IMG/VR virus record: IMGVR_UViG_3300025161_000004
Span: 62,001 to 126,000 of that record
Direction: 5' to 3' (one strand)
Length of the DNA stretch: 64,000 nt
Below the pieces are notes generated by a model. It saw nothing but the letters and a program-made list of their open reading frames with translations. It had not been told where the DNA came from and did no database searches. Below, one piece after another: positions 35,195 through 41,240 of this stretch. Within the stretch, counting starts at the first letter, position 1. Every line of letters begins with the position of its first letter. The position numbers and the translations under genes were made by a program.

Positions 35195-36218
35195 TTATTC
35201 TAATAGATTAAAACCGATTTTTCCATTAAATTCTTTGTGTCCGTTATAATTGTTGTAATTATAGAGTTCTGCTAAAGTATGCTCTTTATTTACTCTTATA
35301 TCAGAACCAATTCTTTCAAGAACTTTATTACACATGTCAATCGATAATCTTCCAAAATTAACTTCAGCTAACAATCTTCCTTTTCTAAACAAAGCCGTAT
35401 CAATATTTTCTTTGACATTGATAGTTGCTAAAATCTTTATCTTAAAAAGATCACCCATAATACCATCACAAACGTTTAACAGTGTAGAGATTATATTATT
35501 TGATCGCATTTTTCTATCTATAAATAGATTTTCACTATCCTCAAATATAAGAATATTGTCTTTCAAATTTTGAATTACAAAACTCATATTTCTCGGCTCA
35601 AATAAATATTGAACCATGTCTTGTGTTACGTAAACAAAATCTTTTTTAACACTCTTCACTAAATGCTTTATAAGATAGGATTTTCCAGTACCTGGGTCAC
35701 CCATAAAAATAATTAATCCGCTTTTATCCATTGATAATATTTCTTGTAATTCATTAATGGTGAAGTTAATATTATAACTATCTTCATGTAATTCAAACTT
35801 AGGTAATGTAAATGGTATCTTGTTGATATTATAATTATCTGCAACAAGAAAATATACATTATCTTTTTTTTTCTAGACTTTTCTCGAAATCAATTAACAA
35901 AGCATTAATTTTTTCTGAATTTTTAAACTTACTACAGTAAAAATGTGATATTTTAAAAGTAATCAAAATATATGATTTATATGTTTTGTGAACTAAATGT
36001 ATCTCATTACTAAAATCTAATAAAATAGAATAACCTGCATTAAGTAATTTTTGTAATAAATCAGGGTTTATCAAGTTTTCATTATTATTTTTAAATATTT
36101 TATGGAATAATGTATTATTACTATCAATATTCATCACATCAAAAATATAACGGTAGTATAAAAAACTATTATATACCCCAATATATTTAGAATCTAATTG
36201 TTTATTTGTTCGAGTCAT
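35195..36218 (-). CDS. AAA+ ATPase apparently split by a frameshift at an A9 tract (joined product about 340 aa)
   Basis: Walker A 'GDPGTGKS', Walker B 'LIFED', 'LLNVCDG', 'ATIN', 'DTALFRKGR'. The ATPase frame is open for 44 codons upstream of 35731, back to the A9 tract at 35864-35872. Deleting one A fuses it to ORF 35859..36218. Confidence 0.7.
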
Positions 36219-37197
36219 AATGTTTGTTTATTATTTTAAAACTTCCTTTACTATATTGTACTACTACACCTTCAAACGGTTTACCATATAATTCTTTTAG
36301 GTCTTCAGAATATTTTTTTATTAAATCTGGCGTTAAAATCACGTTTTCTTCAACTAATTTCACCGTAGGTAAATCCATTTCCTTTGCAACATTAAGAAAA
36401 TAAAATTGATCGCCTTTACGTGCATATCTACGTTCATCAATCAAATAAACAGAAAACATTGCCCAACCATTACTCAATTTTGAGTGTGGATTAATCTTTA
36501 TTGATTGAATACCAATACCATATGATTCACCACGAATTGAAAGAGAGATTCTATACTTTTCACTAAACTCGGTAAGTTTCCTTTCAATATCATATCTTGA
36601 GACATTATTAGTATAGTTATTTGAAATTTCTAGCTTTAATTCATGTTTCCTACCCAAAACACCAAATGTTTTTTCGACGAAATGACGGTAAAATGAATTA
36701 CTTTGACCATCAATTTTTAAAAAAATATCAACCAATTCACCATATGGTAATTCTGAATTATCTAAATTTTCCCACCTTTCTTCATCAGTTACAGGAATAC
36801 CATATGGTAATTCTCCTTTTATTGAGATATCGGTTGGTGTGGGTGGTTCATAATGACTAATCCAAAGTAGTTCTGATACATCCTCACCAACATGGTAATC
36901 TTTAATTGTTTCGGAAATTTCCTTGGGTAATGCTGTGAATGGTATAATAATACCTTCACTCCAAATATCACGAAGTTTAACCGCCTTCACTCTTTTTTGA
37001 GAATATTTTTTATATTCTTGTGCCCACTCAGAATCTGGAAATACACTATCGGGTCGAACATAAATAACTTTATCACCAACCTTAAACTGATCTCTTTTTG
37101 TGATACATTTATACCCCAATACTGTACAAATATCTAAACGATCGGCGTTCGGATGATTGATAACTTCTTTTACTACTTCAATTGTTGCATCTCTCAT
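36202..37197 (-). CDS. ATP-dependent RNA ligase, DRB0094/Rnl5-like, with N-terminal OB (tRNA-binding-like) domain
   Basis: N-terminal 'HPNADRLD...V.G......F.VGD.V.Y..PDS'; motif I 'KIDG', III 'RGE.YG.GIQ', IV 'EGVV', V 'FKII'. Confidence 0.85.
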   Translation of the reverse strand: MRDATIEVVKEVINHPNADRLDICTVLGYKCITKRDQFKVGDKVIYVRPDSVFPDSEWAQEYKKYSQKRVKAVKLRDIWSEGIIIPFTALPKEISETIKDYHVGEDVSELLWISHYEPPTPTDISIKGELPYGIPVTDEERWENLDNSELPYGELVDIFLKIDGQSNSFYRHFVEKTFGVLGRKHELKLEISNNYTNNVSRYDIERKLTEFSEKYRISLSIRGESYGIGIQSIKINPHSKLSNGWAMFSVYLIDERRYARKGDQFYFLNVAKEMDLPTVKLVEENVILTPDLIKKYSEDLKELYGKPFEGVVVQYSKGSFKIINKHYDSNK

Positions 37198-37254
37198 GAA
37201 TTCAGGATTTTGTTATCAAAATTTTTTTTCTCGAAATTTCTATCCCTTATCTTA

Positions 37255-37262
37255 CAAATATA
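37255..37262 (-). promoter_or_regulatory. Bacteroidota-type -7 element (TATATTTG) upstream of the RNA ligase
   Basis: TAnnTTTG match 58 nt upstream of the ATG. Confidence 0.5.
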
Positions 37263-37315
37263 ACAAAAAATAATGTTTAAGACAGCTATTACATTGTAAA
37301 TTTTCTTTTTTCAAT

Positions 37316-37438
37316 TTATTTATTTTTGATTGATTTTTTGGTTTTAGATTTTTTTAACTCTCTTTTTTTTAGCTTTTTATGTTCTGAATTGTTTTTATTA
37401 ATCTTTTCCTGATTAATACCGTCAAGCCAAATATTCAT
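37316..37438 (-). CDS. Possible small Lys-rich protein (40 aa, MNIWLDGINQEK...)
   Basis: ATG-to-TAA ORF read by hand in the 500-bp gap; below the ORF-track cutoff. Confidence 0.3.
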   Translation of the reverse strand: MNIWLDGINQEKINKNNSEHKKLKKRELKKSKTKKSIKNK

Positions 37439-37641
37439 AAATTATGATTTGATTTTAACTTATCTTTTTATGGATTAAAAATAACAATAAATAATTTAAT
37501 TTTTATGAAAAAAAAATATTATTTATCTTTTTTACATATAAAAAACTACTTTTAAATCTATTCTCTCCAATGATTAAAAATATTTTTGAAATTGAGAATA
37601 ATATATTCAGGATAGTTATGATTAAAACTTCCATTTTTGAT

Positions 37642-37675
37642 AAAAAAAGGGGTATTCGTTCACATAAATACCCCT
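37642..37675 (-). terminator. Intrinsic terminator ending the TROVE-like/ARPP-like operon
   Basis: AGGGGTATT-loop-AATACCCCTTTTTTT. Confidence 0.75.
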
Positions 37676-37698
37676 ATAAAAATAAAATAAGTTAATTT

Positions 37699-38802
37699 TT
37701 AGATACTAAAATTACTTTGTTTGCGTGATTTAGCCCTTAACTCGGTAACCCTACGTAATGATTCTGGATTAAATCTTTCTCTTTTAACAATACTTACCAT
37801 GTGGTGATAATTCTCTTCAGAGATAACTTGACCAACATAACCAGTGTGTTTTAATATATAACTTTTTGGTAAAGAAGCAGTTGCATCACTTGGATTACCT
37901 GTAGTATCCAAAGTAGATTCAAATGTAAGATCAAGTAATTCTTTTACTTTATCTTCAACAGACTTGGTAATATTTTTCTTGGTTTTATTCAAAGCAGTTT
38001 CTATCTTGCTAAGAACATCACCTCTATTTACTTTAGAATATTCTTCAGTAAAATACTTCTTACCACTTTTCTTATTCAACTCACTGATAATAGCAAGTGA
38101 CCCATAGCAATCACGTATAAGTCTTTCCCATACTTGTTCAGCATAGGTAAATGAAGGAAACTTATCAATCGCAACTATTTCACCATCGATCAATACAATT
38201 GTACCAATCAAGTTCTTTGGTCTTTCAAAGTGTGCAATAAACTGTTCGAGTTTCTTGTCGTACTTATTAAAATACTTATCAAGATAATATCCAGTATTGG
38301 TATTGGTATCTCTACCTAATTTTTCAATAGCAGGATATATGTTTGCATGACCAACAGTATAACCTACTTTATCAAACAACATTTCTCTCATTGAGAGAGG
38401 TATCAAACGCATTTCGTTGCCGTTTGTATCTCTGATGTAACCTGTTTGTGAACCCTGTACACAACCAGCATCATCATATCTTACAGTAGATGATTTTGGC
38501 AAGTATGCTGACTTCACCATACCGTGATTTTGTGCTGATTGTTTAGTCATTATCGCCAATTGAGTTGGCATAATAACTTCCTTGTTTGATTCATTCTTAA
38601 ATATTAAGTTACCATAACCACTATTAGATGCTTTAACATCTTTAAATGGATTAGCAAATCTTTCATCCAAAGAAAATTCCTTGTCTGTAGTTAAACAAAC
38701 CAATTGCATATTCATTATTGATTGAACAACTATGTTTCCAGACGCATCCTTTACTGGTCTGCAACCTTTCAATAATTCGACAAATTCTTTCTGTGCATTC
38801 AT
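37699..38802 (-). CDS. ARPP/DUF6569-like protein
   Basis: 'YG.L.F.N......P......K..AQNH...', 'GCVQ.SQ.G' and 'G.IVLIDGEIVAID.FPS..Y...W..L' pattern, recognised from memory as ARPP-type; 11 nt downstream of the TROVE-like gene. Confidence 0.5.
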   Translation of the reverse strand: MNAQKEFVELLKGCRPVKDASGNIVVQSIMNMQLVCLTTDKEFSLDERFANPFKDVKASNSGYGNLIFKNESNKEVIMPTQLAIMTKQSAQNHGMVKSAYLPKSSTVRYDDAGCVQGSQTGYIRDTNGNEMRLIPLSMREMLFDKVGYTVGHANIYPAIEKLGRDTNTNTGYYLDKYFNKYDKKLEQFIAHFERPKNLIGTIVLIDGEIVAIDKFPSFTYAEQVWERLIRDCYGSLAIISELNKKSGKKYFTEEYSKVNRGDVLSKIETALNKTKKNITKSVEDKVKELLDLTFESTLDTTGNPSDATASLPKSYILKHTGYVGQVISEENYHHMVSIVKRERFNPESLRRVTELRAKSRKQSNFSI

Positions 38803-38813
38803 ATTCTTAATCT

Positions 38814-40451
38814 TTAGGCTTTGACATAATTTTTTCTTATTCTTGAAACATTGTTTGCTTCAATCAATTTTACTTGATTTAACAACCACTGTTTAGTATC
38901 AACTTCAAGCATCTTAGCACTCATTTGAGTAGCAATTGATGCTGGGTTGCTCACTGCAAGTAATGCAACATTCGTGTTTGCAATTGGTCTCACATTTGCA
39001 TTCATTTCAGCACCAACGATTGGTGAAATCTGGAATATAGGTAATGATCTCTGTGTTTCATTGATATATGTTTCAATTACTTCACCTGCCAAACCTTCAT
39101 ACTGATTTTCATAACCATCAGTGATTATAAAAATTGCATCATATTTATTTTGTTCACTTTCGTTTTTCAACAGAGAAACAAATGCTGTAGCAATATCAGT
39201 TGCCTCACCTTCAGTATTTACCACAACTTGAGTTTTAGATGATTTTTCCAAAACTTTTACAGTGAAATCAGCAATTGCTCTTGGAGTATTCTTTGATTCC
39301 ACTTTATTACCGAACATTGAGTTTGATCTATCAACAATAATTCCAATATTGTTGTACGCAAAACCAGTGATCTTATTAGATTCTGCAAGTTTATCAATTG
39401 CATTAATCAATTTAGCATCAAAACCATTTTCATAGCCAGTTTTATACAATGCCATGAAATCAGTCGCAGCTTCTAAATTAACTTCCTTAACTACACCAAG
39501 TTTTTCATTTTTCTTGGTCTGTCTTACTTGCTGATTTACAGAAGTAACTTCATTGTTTTTTCTAATCAATGCAAGTGTTGATTTTCTCAACAATTTAGTT
39601 GACCACATACCAGCATATTGTGGGTGTTTCTTATTTGAAACTAAACCAACCAATACTTCTTCAGGTACTTTAGTTACTGAAGTAATATCTTGTGTTGCAA
39701 CATAAAATTCGCTGATAATTGGAAATTCACTTTTTGAATAAAATGATTTATCACCCTTACCAAAGATGAATAAAAAAATCTTGTATAATTTTTCACTATT
39801 AAGAATTGGAGAATACTTTTTAAGAAAAGTATTACTGATTTTTACCTCCTTTTCATTTGAATAAACTCCACCACTTCTAATATACTTTTCAGCAATAGAA
39901 AGAAGAATAGATGTTTTCTTTTCACCATAGACGTGTTTTAAAATATTTCTAATCTTTTTTCTATATTTAACAGAATAAAACTCTAAATTGGGATTACCCA
40001 AAATGTAACCAAGTACTATTTTTCTTGCTCTTTCGTTATTAATTTTATTCTTGCGTAATAAAATAAACAAACGAAGCACATAAGAAATACCTAAATTTTT
40101 ATCTAGATTATACAATGCACCAAGAAGTGCTTTATCTGAAATACCATTATCAATCCAATCAATAGGATTAACAATATAACATGCACCACCATTAGCTGTA
40201 TTTTTAAATTCATTCAATATAGCTTCCTGAATAAATTTACCTGTAACACCATTTTGATTTGCAAGTATCAATGGTAATTCTTTTGATGTTGAATATAATG
40301 ATGATATAGCATTTTTTATTGCAACATCTTGCTCCTCTTTAGAATGATAATATGTAGCTCCACCTCTCGCACCACTTGCAATAGAAATACCATCAATTAA
40401 TGATTTTTTTATTACTGATAATTGTTTTGCGGTTAATACTAATTGTTCCAT
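38814..40451 (-). CDS. TROVE/Ro60-like protein with C-terminal vWA (MIDAS) domain
   Basis: About 360-aa basic helical N-terminal region starting 'GGATYY'; then MIDAS 'IIVDRSNSM', 'ATDIA', 'IITDGYEN'. About 545 aa, as for Ro60. Likely ATG is at 40451. The vWA call is firm; the TROVE call is inferred. Confidence 0.6.
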   Translation of the reverse strand: MEQLVLTAKQLSVIKKSLIDGISIASGARGGATYYHSKEEQDVAIKNAISSLYSTSKELPLILANQNGVTGKFIQEAILNEFKNTANGGACYIVNPIDWIDNGISDKALLGALYNLDKNLGISYVLRLFILLRKNKINNERARKIVLGYILGNPNLEFYSVKYRKKIRNILKHVYGEKKTSILLSIAEKYIRSGGVYSNEKEVKISNTFLKKYSPILNSEKLYKIFLFIFGKGDKSFYSKSEFPIISEFYVATQDITSVTKVPEEVLVGLVSNKKHPQYAGMWSTKLLRKSTLALIRKNNEVTSVNQQVRQTKKNEKLGVVKEVNLEAATDFMALYKTGYENGFDAKLINAIDKLAESNKITGFAYNNIGIIVDRSNSMFGNKVESKNTPRAIADFTVKVLEKSSKTQVVVNTEGEATDIATAFVSLLKNESEQNKYDAIFIITDGYENQYEGLAGEVIETYINETQRSLPIFQISPIVGAEMNANVRPIANTNVALLAVSNPASIATQMSAKMLEVDTKQWLLNQVKLIEANNVSRIRKNYVKA

Positions 40452-40553: not shown

Positions 40554-40584
40554 AAAAAAAAGTGATGAATTTTTTACTCATCAC
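40554..40584 (-). terminator. Intrinsic terminator closing the ncRNA cluster
   Basis: GTGATGAG-TAAAAAA-TTCATCAC-TTTTTTTT. Confidence 0.75.
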
Positions 40585-40660
40585 CTCTTCAAAAATCTTG
40601 AATAATTTTATTAGGTTATATTTTGACTTACTTATACAGTAAGTATCTAAATTTCTTATT

Positions 40661-40751: not shown

Positions 40752-40868
40752 ATGTCTTCAAATTAAAACCACCTATTTTAATTTTTTAATAGGAATATAC
40801 AAGTTCGATTTTTTTAATTGGTTATAACTTAAAATTTGAATCAAAAATCGTAACTTCATTATATATAG

Positions 40869-40941
40869 TAGCGAGAGCAGGATTCGAACCTGCGATCTTG
40901 TGGTTATGAGCCACACTAGTTAACCGCTTCTCTATCTCGCA
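40869..40941 (-). tRNA. tRNA-Met (CAT), initiator-like, no encoded CCA
   Basis: Cloverleaf: acceptor TGCGAGA/TCTCGCT with 1:72 mismatch, anticodon arm TGTGG-CTCATAA-CCACA, T arm GCAGG-TTCGAAT-CCTGC; 3' end ACTA; weak D stem. Confidence 0.85.
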
Positions 40942-40945
40942 ATAT

Positions 40946-41072
40946 GATTTAGGGAAAAATTTGTCAGTTATTTTTTTTGACAGATAAACACTAACACTAC
41001 TTATTAGTAAATTATCACTCTATAATAATTTAATTAAATTACTGTAATAACTTCAAGTTTTCCCATTAAATC
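40946..41072 (-). ncRNA. Structured small RNA unit B (Y-RNA-like, about 113-127 nt)
   Basis: Ends pair (GATTTA/TAAATC, GGGAAAA/TTTTCCC); upper helix AGTTATT/AATAACT; contains GGAAAACT-N11-CAGTAA. Confidence 0.6.
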
Positions 41073-41104: not shown

Positions 41105-41240
41105 TGGGGGAGGCAGGATTCGAACCTGCTATACTTACTATTGGATTAGTAATATGACCCAATTACTGTAAATATAATCAGTTCTCCAAAAAAGGAGTAG
41201 TTTAAATTATATTTGAAAGTATTCGTTTTACTACTCCCCC
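41105..41240 (-). ncRNA. 136-nt tRNA-like RNA (unit C) whose anticodon arm is replaced by the permuted repeat motif
   Basis: Acceptor GGGGGAG/CTCCCCC-A; D-like arm AGTA/TACT; perfect T arm GCAGG-TTCGAAT-CCTGC; central arm AAATATAAT..CTCC-T6-GGAG-AACTG-ATTATATTT then ACAGTAA; extra hairpin TTACTA/TAGTAA. Confidence 0.75.

What the first reader, a model, noticed from the sequence alone, without database searches (positions are those of the whole stretch)
37699..38802. ARPP/DUF6569-like protein as dedicated partner of the Ro-like protein
It lies 11 nt after the TROVE/vWA gene and shares its promoter and terminator, so it is likely a functional partner. It has conserved-looking polar motifs (QNH, GCVQ.SQ, HFERP). 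The family assignment is from memory and I do not know its biochemistry. It may be the enzymatic effector recruited by the RNP, the role PNPase has in the Deinococcus Rsr-Y RNA complex (inference).
Basis: inference. Interest (0 to 1): 0.6.

Follow-up and report, generated by a model that had tools for sequence, protein, structure and literature searches.

The report
Phage Ro-like protein's obligate ARPP partner
In an uncultured jumbo phage, an ARPP-family protein of unknown chemistry is encoded directly after a very divergent Ro60-like RNA-binding protein and is predicted to dock on that protein's metal-binding (vWA/MIDAS) face. This gives a first testable candidate ligand for a site on Ro proteins whose role is still unclear.

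Summary
The ORF at 37699..38802 (-) encodes 367 aa, lies 11 nt after the upstream gene, and is under strong purifying selection. It belongs to Pfam ARPP-1 (53.7 bits against a cut-off of 27).

The upstream 545-aa protein matches no TROVE sequence model. By fold and language-model features it is a Ro60-like helical ring plus a vWA domain with a complete MIDAS.

The pairing is obligate as far as sampled:
- 72 of 72 ARPP-recruited phage loci and 68 of 68 informative Ro-recruited loci carry both genes.
- All 10 distant ARPP lineages and all 9 distant Ro-like lineages carry both (partner identity down to 18-24%).
- One contig carries an in-frame fusion.

A controlled complex prediction supports binding (0.66 against 0.01). 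It places the family-invariant Phe-Glu of "HFERP" against the MIDAS loops. The invariant Gln/His/Cys cluster was not among the confident contacts.

tRNA or tRNA-like genes lie next to the module in most lineages. RNA ligase or PNKP genes are near it in some.

The best reading is that ARPP is the dedicated protein subunit, and probably the catalytic one, of a phage Ro-like RNP that works on tRNA-like RNA. The partnership is well supported; the chemistry is unknown. I found no description of this pairing in the searchable literature.

The parts
37699..38802 (-). ARPP-family gene (367 aa), the finding itself
   Evidence: The ORF is shown. It matches Pfam ARPP-1 at 53.7 bits against a cut-off of 27. 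Its model matches ESM Atlas ARPP-1/ARPP-2 clusters at TM 0.71 over 317 residues. dN/dS is about 0.07.
38524..38532 (-). Codons of Q91-N92-H93, part of the putative active-site cluster
   Evidence: These residues are invariant in clade alignment A2. Across 142 family representatives Q91 is kept in 139 and H93 in 134. They are not among the confidently predicted interface residues.
38446..38472 (-). Codons of D111-A-G-C114-V-Q116-G-S-Q119. C114 is the family's invariant cysteine.
   Evidence: C114 is kept in 142 of 142 representatives, position 116 is Q or E in all 142, and Q119 is kept in 132. The authors who defined ARPP describe an absolutely conserved Cys and Gln (PMC9503650).
38218..38232 (-). 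Codons of H191-F192-E193-R194-P195, the predicted docking motif on the partner's MIDAS face
   Evidence: F192 and E193 are kept in 142 of 142 representatives. Residues 189-195 are among the confident interface residues, together with partner residues 378-380, 417-420 and 447.
38814..40451 (-). Divergent Ro60-like gene (545 aa from the ATG): a helical TROVE-like ring plus a C-terminal vWA domain. This is the partner of ARPP.
39318..39332 (-). Codons of the MIDAS motif D376-x-S378-x-S380 (numbered from the TTG start; subtract 2 for the ATG start)
   Evidence: The motif is invariant in A1 and in 10 diverse partners, A7. Residues 378-380 are in the predicted interface.
39105..39119 (-). Codons of D447-G-Y-E-N451, the signature of this vWA subfamily (D447 is the last MIDAS Asp)
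   Evidence: The motif is invariant in all 10 diverse partners. It served as the search pattern that recovered 108 relatives. Residues 447, 449 and 451-456 are in the predicted interface.
37648..37675 (-). Intrinsic-terminator-like hairpin plus T run, closing the two-gene unit
   Evidence: It is also visible in the sequence.
40556..40590 (-). Terminator-like hairpin upstream of the Ro-like gene, separating it from the tRNA genes
40868..40941 (-). Lone tRNA-Met(CAT), 411 nt upstream of the Ro-like gene. Candidate RNA component or substrate of the module.
   Evidence: It is called by ARAGORN and by Rfam at 58.6 bits. It is the only one of 36 tRNAs in the 247-kb record that lies outside the clusters at 187-231 kb, and a second tRNA-Met(CAT) sits in those clusters. 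A tRNA-Met(CAT) lies upstream of the Ro-like gene in most related loci.
41105..41240 (-). Expanded tRNA-like RNA (136 nt) with acceptor stem, T arm, an anticodon-like stem-loop and a long inserted hairpin. Candidate Y-RNA-like partner.
   Evidence: It scores 34 bits on the Rfam tRNA model with a 79-nt insertion. Its folding z-score is -4.45. Five homologues support a consensus structure in which 10 of 31 pairs show compensatory changes.
36202..37197 (-). RNA ligase gene, next downstream. It gives an RNA-repair context but is present only in the closest relatives.
   Evidence: It matches PHROG RNA ligase at 3e-37 and Pfam PHA02142 OB plus RNA_ligase. Its cluster c13 is the gene next to ARPP only in the window and L007; it also occurs further downstream in L006 and L002.

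Best explanation
The gene encodes the dedicated protein subunit of a phage-encoded, highly divergent Ro60-like particle.

Shown:
- It is a member of the ARPP family.
- It is co-oriented with a Ro-like (helical ring plus vWA) gene, 11 nt downstream, inside one terminator-bounded unit.
- The two genes are inherited together in every lineage sampled, across partner identities down to about 18-25%.

Predicted, with controls:
- The two proteins bind.
- ARPP sits on the MIDAS face of the vWA domain.
- The contact includes its family-invariant Phe192-Glu193 and Gln27.

Inferred:
- Glu193 completes the MIDAS metal coordination, as acidic ligand residues do in other vWA/MIDAS complexes.
- The second invariant patch (Gln91, His93, Cys114, Gln/Glu116, Gln119, Arg139), on the inserted beta-barrel, is a thiol-based active site.
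- The Ro-like ring captures tRNA-like RNA: either the odd tRNA-like RNAs encoded next to it, or damaged tRNAs.
- The ring presents an RNA end or ribose moiety to ARPP, as part of phage RNA quality control or repair that counters host tRNA-targeting defences. This would work alongside the RNA ligase next door and the PNKP encoded elsewhere in the genome.
For: Family membership: Pfam ARPP-1 at 53.7 bits against a cut-off of 27; Atlas fold match at TM 0.71.

Partner identity: the PDB fold matches are Ro60/Rsr/TROVE over both domains; Atlas features and structure agree; the MIDAS motif is intact and invariant.

Linkage:
- 72 of 72 ARPP-recruited loci and 68 of 68 informative Ro-recruited loci.
- The flanks vary and carry homing endonucleases, one of which sits between the two genes in 9 loci.
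- The partner was confirmed by hhalign for the nine ARPP representatives looked up, at E 4e-105 to 8e-16.
- The tenth distant lineage, LR756500.1, was confirmed by tblastn (E 1e-26 for the partner, 3e-34 for ARPP) and adjacent ORFs.
- 9 of 9 distant partner lineages.
- One in-frame fusion of 884 aa.
- In a bacterial-looking context the partner is reduced to its vWA-containing half, so the vWA is the conserved core of the pairing.

Binding: ipSAE 0.67/0.66/0.63 against a best control of 0.01. The mark was reached by 58 of 80 solved complexes and 2 of 110 mismatched pairs. The runs agree in at least 77% of contacts, and partner pLDDT is at least 86. The interface is the MIDAS loops 378-380, 417-420 and 447-456 against ARPP 17-30, 186-195 and 246-278.

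Enzyme-like invariants are shown.

RNA context:
- A lone tRNA-Met and an expanded tRNA-like RNA lie just upstream.
- tRNA or odd tRNA genes lie next to the pair in most distant loci.
- RNA ligase lies downstream, PNKP lies beside the pair in L081, and PNKP is present in the window's own genome.

Published background:
- Y RNAs with tRNA-like domains are encoded next to Ro60 in bacteria and phages (PMC4201824).
- The role of the Ro60 MIDAS is described as unclear (PMC12135203).
- ARPP was proposed to act on ribose moieties through its conserved Cys (PMC9503650).
Against: - There is no experimental datum of any kind. No RNA-seq run holds the locus.
- The partner's Ro identity rests on fold and embedding similarity only. 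No sequence model links it to TROVE, TM-scores to solved Ro60 are only about 0.42, and helical repeats can give middling Z by chance (note).
- The ARPP AF2 model is mediocre (pLDDT 65.6, and below 50 over 115-130 and 156-188). No solved fold or chemistry is known for it.
- The Glu193-MIDAS contact is inferred from interface residue lists. No metal was modelled. F192 and E193 are invariant throughout the sampled family, so they could equally be catalytic or structural.
- Most linkage counts come from one phage clade, where synteny is partly inherited. The fusion is a single contig in a singleton cluster and could be a lost stop codon or an assembly error.
- RNA ligase and PNKP adjacency is sporadic, and jumbo phages carry many tRNAs anyway.
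- The complex calibration holds only roughly, because my own alignments were used.
Confidence: 0.6

Rival explanations
1. ARPP binds the vWA MIDAS but is not an enzyme. It would be a regulatory or adaptor subunit, a lid on the MIDAS or an RNA- or ring-contacting accessory that tunes what the Ro-like ring binds.
For: The only modelled property is binding at the MIDAS face. No solved enzyme resembles it. Three of the ten residues invariant in the diverse alignment (Q27, F192, E193) lie in the predicted interface. A conserved basic C-terminal tail (aa 340-365, low pLDDT) could be an RNA- or ring-binding arm.
Against: A second invariant polar cluster (Q91, H93, C114, Q/E116, Q119, R139) is not among the confident contacts. 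An invariant Cys with His and Gln is hard to explain for a purely structural subunit. The authors who defined ARPP also read these residues as catalytic (PMC9503650).
Confidence: 0.17
2. The pair is a conflict module unrelated to RNA repair. This could be a phage-borne defence, superinfection-exclusion or anti-defence system in which the vWA protein acts as a sensor or chaperone and ARPP is the effector acting on a sugar-containing target such as ADP-ribose derivatives, nucleotides or DNA ends.
For: ARPP was defined in ARG-centred predicted immune systems, which often also carry a vWA 'chaperone', and in pairs with HIRAN or WYL domains (PMC9503650). The pair sits in a variable region rich in mobile endonucleases. 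One member lies in a bacterial-looking context, and its partner lacks the N-terminal half of the ring. The vWA region gives a weak hit to a PADLOC defence candidate (E 2e-4).
Against: The phage partners keep the full Ro60-like ring. tRNA or tRNA-like genes flank the pair in most lineages, and RNA ligase or PNKP genes are adjacent in some. No ARG, rhodanese-phosphatase, HIRAN or WYL gene was seen in any locus table examined. ARPP has no PADLOC hit.
Confidence: 0.18
3. The two genes are merely syntenic neighbours in one phage lineage and do not interact physically or functionally.
For: Most loci come from one clade with shared gene order. Neighbouring genes alone are weak evidence, as the complex-prediction tool description itself warns.
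Against: Linkage holds across lineages whose partners share only 18-32% identity and whose other neighbours differ completely. It survives homing-endonuclease insertions on both sides and between the genes. There is one fused ORF. The controlled complex prediction passes by a wide margin.
Confidence: 0.05

Closest known systems
[quoted passage not shown]
   Same: It matches the Pfam model above its cut-off. It has the same predicted fold as Atlas ARPP clusters (TM 0.71). It keeps the family's invariant Cys and Gln. Its biochemistry is likewise unknown.
   Different: It has none of the published contexts (ARG systems, HIRAN, WYL, aminosugar deacetylase). Here the constant neighbour is a Ro60-like TROVE/vWA protein in phages. 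The window protein matches ARPP-1 only modestly and does not reach ARPP-2 at E<=1. The published ARG systems often contain a vWA 'chaperone', which may reflect the same ARPP-vWA contact, but this was not tested.
Ro60/Rsr - Y RNA - PNPase particle (RYPER) of Deinococcus and Salmonella, and the Thermus phage phiLo Ro60-Yrl-PNPase complex (PMC4201824, PMC12135203)
   Same: It has a ring-shaped helical-repeat protein with a C-terminal vWA/MIDAS domain. tRNA-like non-coding RNA genes lie directly upstream. An accessory protein gives the particle its activity. It occurs in phages.
   Different: In RYPER the effector (host PNPase) is tethered through the Y RNA and is not encoded next to rsr. Here the accessory protein is encoded in the same operon, is specific to this divergent Ro-like family, and is predicted to bind directly to the vWA MIDAS. 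The Ro-like protein is undetectable by TROVE sequence models. The tRNA-like RNA has its ends in the acceptor stem and an inserted hairpin, whereas YrlA (from my own knowledge) has its ends in the Ro-binding stem. No canonical Y RNA or YrlA Rfam hit was found.
vWA/MIDAS-ligand complexes in which an acidic ligand residue completes metal coordination (integrin I domains; Rea1/MDN1 MIDAS with Ytm1/Rsa4 UBL domains). Established knowledge; these structures appear as vWA-only matches.
   Same: The predicted interface is centred on the three MIDAS loops. The ligand segment that contacts them carries an invariant Glu.
   Different: No metal was modelled, and the Glu-metal contact is inferred rather than seen. 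The ligand is a putative enzyme rather than an adhesion or assembly factor.

Membership tests
ARPP-1 (Pfam PF20208) | Match to the family HMM above the curated gathering score | tested here: met
   53.7 bits against a cut-off of 27, E 2.5e-14, residues 27-282 on profile positions 8-271 of 297. The same result came from the six-frame genome search.
ARPP-1 (Pfam PF20208) | Absolutely conserved cysteine and glutamine among a group of invariant polar residues (PMC9503650) | tested here: met
   C114 is kept in 142 of 142 representatives, Q91 in 139, Q119 in 132 and H93 in 134. The same residues are invariant in the clade.
ARPP-1 (Pfam PF20208) | Predicted fold: a beta-meander core with an inserted beta-barrel carrying the conserved residues | tested here: met
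   The AF2 model is beta-rich, with strands 56-135 carrying Q91, H93 and C114. TM is 0.71 and 0.64 to ESM Atlas clusters that are 100% ARPP-1. Model quality is moderate (pLDDT 65.6).
ARPP-1 (Pfam PF20208) | Published genomic contexts (ARG plus rhodanese-phosphatase systems; HIRAN; WYL; deacetylase). This is a context rather than a criterion for the domain. | tested here: not met
   None of these families appears among the neighbours in the window or in any locus table examined.
Ro60 / TROVE (Pfam PF05731), for the partner | Match to the TROVE sequence model | tested here: not met
   There is no hit at E<=1 for the protein, no hit in the whole phage record while the Deinococcus and Bacteroides controls ring, and the A1 profile finds no PDB Ro60 sequence.
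Ro60 / TROVE (Pfam PF05731), for the partner | Architecture: helical-repeat ring followed by a vWA domain, superposable on solved Ro60 | tested here: met
Ro60 / TROVE (Pfam PF05731), for the partner | Complete MIDAS motif in the vWA domain | tested here: met
   D376-x-S378-x-S380 and D447 are invariant in A1 and in 10 diverse partners. T420 is nearly invariant in A1.
Ro60 / TROVE (Pfam PF05731), for the partner | Y RNA or tRNA-like non-coding RNA encoded next to the gene and bound by the protein | tested here: inconclusive
   An expanded tRNA-like RNA and a lone tRNA-Met lie upstream. Similar elements lie next to most distant pairs. There is no Rfam Y RNA or YrlA hit. Binding cannot be tested here.
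RYPER-type effector recruitment (Rsr-Y RNA-PNPase) | The effector nuclease is tethered to Ro through the Y RNA | not testable with these tools
   The only model available predicts a direct protein-protein contact. No RNA was modelled.
MIDAS-ligand complex | An acidic ligand residue completes coordination of the MIDAS metal | tested here: inconclusive
   The interface lists contain MIDAS residues 378-380, 417-420 and 447, and ARPP 189-195 with the invariant E193. No metal was modelled, no E193-MIDAS pair is among the listed lowest-error pairs, and only one complex job was allowed.

The most novel reading that the evidence does not exclude
The locus is a three-part phage machine not described before. 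Its parts would be an expanded tRNA-like RNA (plus a dedicated lone tRNA-Met), a TROVE-model-invisible Ro60-like ring, and ARPP. ARPP's invariant Glu193 would be the first natural ligand identified for a Ro-family MIDAS site. ARPP itself would be a new thiol enzyme that processes RNA ends or ribose adducts on tRNA-like substrates threaded by the ring, serving as a counter-defence against host tRNA-targeting nucleases or RNA modifiers.
Probability: 0.3. Interest if true: 0.85.

Novelty: new variant of a known kind. Interest (0 to 1): 0.72.

Why it matters
Ro60 proteins are studied from bacteria to humans, yet the job of their vWA/MIDAS site is still described as unclear (PMC12135203). The ARPP family has no known chemistry at all (PMC9503650).

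This locus links the two. A whole family of phage Ro-like proteins, invisible to the TROVE sequence model, always comes with an ARPP protein, and that protein is predicted to plug into the MIDAS. That turns two open questions into simple experiments: what a Ro vWA domain binds, and what ARPP does. The experiments are co-purification, point mutants, RNA pull-down and activity assays on an environmental phage's proteins.

It also widens the catalogue of RNA-centred phage-host conflict systems. It suggests that the vWA proteins seen in the published ARPP-containing systems may be direct ARPP partners as well.

Tried and rejected
- Sequence-only identification of the partner failed. Pfam, NCBIfam and PHROGs gave nothing useful. 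PDB sequence searches with the single protein and with profiles found nothing. The Pfam TROVE model found nothing in the genome.
- From memory I considered a His...Cys...Arg order like sortases, or a G-C-[IV] motif like L,D-transpeptidases. No search supported either, so I drop it as untested.
- PADLOC gave no defence-system assignment for ARPP.
- GenBank phages hold no cultured phage with the pair. The only record is the uncultured 462-kb LR756500.1.
- Nucleotide search of the locus against phages found only the tRNA.
- Single-protein search for related loci with three distant partners found nothing. The alignment-based scan worked.
- No RNA-seq run holds the locus, so read laying was not used, and co-transcription and RNA ends are unverified.
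- The fusion protein is a singleton from one contig. I count it as adjacency with possible fusion, not as proof.
- The search for homologous proteins sees only proteins of 0.55-1.75 times the query length. The fusion and the truncated partner were found through the length-free representative search instead.
- No alternative genetic code was used.
Full report
**Setting.** The window is bases 62001-126000 of a 246,768-bp IMG/VR virus record estimated at 79% complete. GC is about 28% and every gene lies on the minus strand. Neighbours are phage genes. Upstream lie a DnaB-type helicase, a 5'-3' exonuclease and a RecA-like protein. Downstream lie an RNA ligase, an AAA ATPase and head-decoration-like proteins. 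The organism is an uncultured jumbo phage. DNA of the locus occurs in sediment, hot-spring and soil metagenomes, and no RNA run holds it.

**The observation.**
- The ORF 37699..38802 (-) encodes 367 aa. It starts 11 nt after the stop of the upstream 545-aa ORF, 38814..40451.
Their key residues are invariant in 31 homologues at 62-91% identity. They are QNH (91-93), DAGCVQGSQ (111-119) and HFERP (191-195).
- dN/dS against the closest relatives is about 0.07 for this gene and 0.08-0.11 for the upstream gene.
- A strong terminator-like hairpin follows the gene (37675..37648). Another precedes the upstream gene (40590..40556). None convincing lies between them.
- The two genes therefore look like one transcription unit, although the promoter is only a weak consensus match.

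**What the protein is.**
- Pfam places it in ARPP-1 (PF20208) at 53.7 bits against a cut-off of 27.
- ARPP was defined computationally in 2022 as a protein of unknown function, with an absolutely conserved Cys and Gln. It was found in ADP-ribosylglycohydrolase-centred systems and in pairs with HIRAN, WYL or a deacetylase. The authors proposed that it acts on ribose moieties, perhaps through a covalent Cys adduct (PMC9503650).
- My AF2 model is moderate (pLDDT 65.6). It superposes on ESM Atlas ARPP clusters at TM 0.71 over 317 residues. It has no solved relative by sequence or fold.
- A profile search of 1.84 billion cluster representatives found only 303 relatives.
- In 142 of those, Q91, C114, G121, P135, F192, E193, G200 and Y233 are essentially invariant. 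H93, Q/E116, Q119, R139 and R230 are nearly so.

**What the neighbour is.**
- No sequence model recognises it.
- Its AF2 model (pLDDT 76, pTM 0.70) has an all-helical N-terminal part of about 360 residues followed by an alpha/beta domain.
- Eleven of the 12 Foldseek PDB matches at E<=0.001 are Ro60, Rsr or TROVE chains aligned over the full length. All listed rows down to E 2.1e-3 belong to that family, including the Thermus phage phiLo Ro60.
- In the ESM Atlas, 21 of the 30 nearest named clusters by language-model features are TROVE/vWA_Ro60 clusters. Atlas structure gives TM 0.56/0.66 to a viral TROVE cluster.
- The MIDAS motif is complete and invariant: D376-x-S378-x-S380, T420, D447.
- I therefore call it Ro60-like by architecture and fold. 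It fails the sequence-model test for TROVE membership.

**Linkage within the phage clade.**
- All 72 IMG/VR loci recruited with the ARPP alignment have the Ro-like gene directly upstream on the same strand.
- Of 80 loci recruited with the Ro-like alignment, 68 have ARPP. The other 12 are all cut by a contig end inside the Ro-like gene.
- The surroundings vary. HNH/NUMOD4, GIY-YIG and NUMOD homing endonucleases and AntA-like genes are inserted upstream and downstream. In 9 loci an HNH/NUMOD4 endonuclease sits between the two genes.
- RNA ligase follows directly only in the window and L007.

**Linkage outside the clade.**
- I looked up nine graded ARPP representatives (404 down to 107 bits) and found one GenBank huge phage by tblastn. 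All ten have a homologue of the Ro-like protein next to ARPP.
- hhalign against the partner alignment gives E 4e-105 to 8e-16 for the nine. For the GenBank phage, tblastn and adjacent ORFs show the same.
- In one contig the two are a single 884-aa ORF. This is a singleton cluster, so a lost stop codon or an assembly error cannot be excluded.
- In one bacterial-looking context the partner is only the C-terminal half, including the vWA domain.
- Ten diverse partners share only vWA residues as invariants: DxSxS-G, DGYEN, G455, P479, E484 and R490.
- A scan of IMG/VR with the DGYEN-containing pattern recovered 108 relatives. The nine new distant loci (24-52% identity) all carry an ARPP ORF directly downstream.
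- The pairing thus holds in both directions at every depth I could sample, and its conserved core is the vWA domain.

**Predicted contact.**
- The controlled complex prediction gives ipSAE 0.67/0.66/0.63 against a best control of 0.01.
- The mark was reached by 58 of 80 solved complexes and 2 of 110 mismatched pairs. The runs agree in at least 77% of contacts, and partner pLDDT is at least 86.
- The tool's verdict is that the model supports binding but does not show it. The calibration holds only roughly, because my own alignments were used.
- The confident interface on the Ro-like protein is made of the MIDAS loops and the following helices: 378-380, 383-384, 417-431 and 447-468.
- On ARPP it comprises 17-30 (with the invariant Q27), 186-195 (with the invariant F192-E193 of HFERP) and 246-278.
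- The other invariant cluster (Q91, H93, C114, Q116, Q119, R139) is not among the confident contacts.
- I infer two functional patches: a docking patch whose Glu may complete the MIDAS metal coordination, and a separate putative thiol active site. No metal was modelled, so the Glu-metal contact is inference.

**RNA context.**
- Upstream of the Ro-like gene lie a tRNA-Met(CAT) at 40868..40941 and a 136-nt tRNA-like element at 41105..41240.
- The phage record has 36 tRNA genes. The other 35 sit in clusters 85-129 kb away, including a second tRNA-Met(CAT), so this one is a lone extra copy.
- The tRNA-like element is conserved in five relatives. Its consensus has an acceptor stem, a long inserted hairpin, an anticodon-like stem-loop whose 'anticodon' differs between relatives, and a T arm. 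Ten of 31 pairs show compensatory changes.
- In most clade loci a tRNA with a highly variable anticodon is followed about 40 nt later by a conserved tRNA-Met(CAT), upstream of the Ro-like gene.
- Distant pairs also have tRNA or odd tRNA genes beside them:
  - tRNA-like RNAs with 24-63-nt insertions in L081 and L082.
  - tRNAs with 6-nt anticodon loops in L082, L175 and L179 that are alike in sequence.
  - A tRNA-Pro between the two genes in L164.
- This parallels the known placement of tRNA-like Y RNAs next to Ro60 genes in bacteria and phages (PMC4201824). No Rfam Y RNA model matches, and binding is untested.
- RNA-repair genes are near the pair in some lineages: RNA ligase in the window, a T4-type PNKP two genes downstream in L081, and CYTH-domain genes in L002 and L161. 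The window's own genome encodes a PNKP elsewhere.

**Comparison with what is known.**
- The closest systems are the ARPP family itself and the Ro60-Y RNA particles, including RYPER and the phage phiLo Ro60.
- In RYPER and phiLo the particle's partner is host PNPase (PMC12135203, PMC4201824). In Deinococcus the Y RNA tethers Ro60 to PNPase (abstract of PMC4201824).
- The present module differs in four ways:
  1. Its Ro-like protein is far outside the TROVE sequence family.
  2. It has a dedicated, co-encoded protein partner.
  3. That partner is an ARPP protein, in a context not listed by the authors who defined ARPP.
  4. The predicted tether is the vWA MIDAS, whose role in Ro60 is described as unclear (PMC12135203).
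- A jumbo-phage survey mentions ROT/TROVE proteins in a few jumbo phages but no ARPP partner (PMC7824862). I found nothing else on ARPP-1 in the searchable library. That library lacks most subscription journals.

**Verdict.**
- The enzymatic role is plausible but unproven. The mode of recruitment is predicted to differ from the PNPase precedent.
- I rate the module a new variant of a known kind, a Ro-type RNP with a novel obligate protein subunit.
- My confidence is about 0.8 for the physical partnership and about 0.4 for an RNA-directed catalytic role. I give 0.6 for the combined statement.
- No step had to be referred.

Noticed in passing
window 41105..41240 (-): This is a 136-nt tRNA-like RNA with a perfect 7-bp acceptor stem, a T arm, an anticodon-like stem-loop and a long inserted hairpin. 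It is conserved in L006, L065, L034, L059 and L021 with compensatory changes (10 of 31 pairs). The 'anticodon' differs between relatives. It is a candidate Y-RNA-like partner of the Ro-like protein.
   Followed up: partly
window 40868..40941 (-); genome C1:102868-102941: This is a lone tRNA-Met(CAT) 411 nt upstream of the Ro-like gene. The other 35 tRNAs of the record lie in clusters at 187-231 kb, including a second tRNA-Met(CAT). A tRNA-Met(CAT) sits upstream of the Ro-like gene in most related loci.
   Followed up: partly
related loci, e.g. L008 3275..3348, L019 2738..2811, L062 2759..2830, L047 3686..3758: In the clade, the tRNA about 40 nt upstream of the conserved tRNA-Met has a different anticodon in almost every lineage. 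Examples are Glu, Leu, Tyr, Asp, Arg, Asn, Lys, Ser, Cys(aca), Ile(tat), Ala and Thr, as well as tca and tta, which would read stop codons. Whether these are decoding tRNAs, suppressors, decoys for anticodon nucleases or Ro ligands is open.
   Followed up: no
L082 3263..3338; L175 3567..3640; L179 3616..3690: tRNA-like genes with a 6-nt anticodon loop (ARAGORN reports a 2-nt anticodon, 'tc') lie a few hundred nt or less upstream of three distant Ro-like genes. They are 78% alike and share an invariant UUCAA in the loop. The Deinococcus Y RNA Yrn1 is also described as having a 6-nt 'anticodon loop' (PMC4201824).
   Followed up: partly
L082 3099..3231; L081 177..272: These are further tRNA-like elements with large insertions in the variable region (about 63 nt and 24 nt). 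They lie immediately upstream of distant Ro-like genes.
   Followed up: no
L042 5438..6004 (also L026, L027, L043, L044, L046, L063, L064, L077): An HNH/NUMOD4 homing endonuclease gene is inserted between the Ro-like and ARPP genes in 9 loci. GIY-YIG, NUMOD and AntA-like genes are inserted on the flanks in many others. The junction between the replication and structural modules is a hotspot for mobile genes.
   Followed up: yes
window 36202..37197, 35859..36218, 35195..35731 (-); genome C1:212666-213073: An RNA ligase (PHA02142 OB plus RNA_ligase domains), a 119-aa protein of unknown function and a 178-aa AAA ATPase follow the module, but only in the closest relatives. A T4-type polynucleotide kinase-phosphatase is encoded elsewhere in the genome.
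   Followed up: partly
window 41161..41174 and 41036..41050 (-): A short repeated word (TTACAGTAATT) occurs in the intergenic region. One copy lies inside the tRNA-like element's inserted hairpin. The related word TTTTCAGTAA is conserved at the same place in relatives and recurs in L021. It may be a phage promoter or processing signal.
   Followed up: no
window 37198..37698: This 500-nt AT-rich stretch between the ARPP terminator and the RNA ligase gene has no ORF of 80 aa or more and no Rfam match.
   Followed up: no
genome C1:230500-230572 and C1:225808-225878 (outside the window): The phage's main tRNA clusters include a tRNA with anticodon CTA, which would read the amber codon (ARAGORN calls it tRNA-Pyl), and one tRNA with an abnormal anticodon loop. 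The window reads cleanly under code 11, so I used no other code.
   Followed up: no
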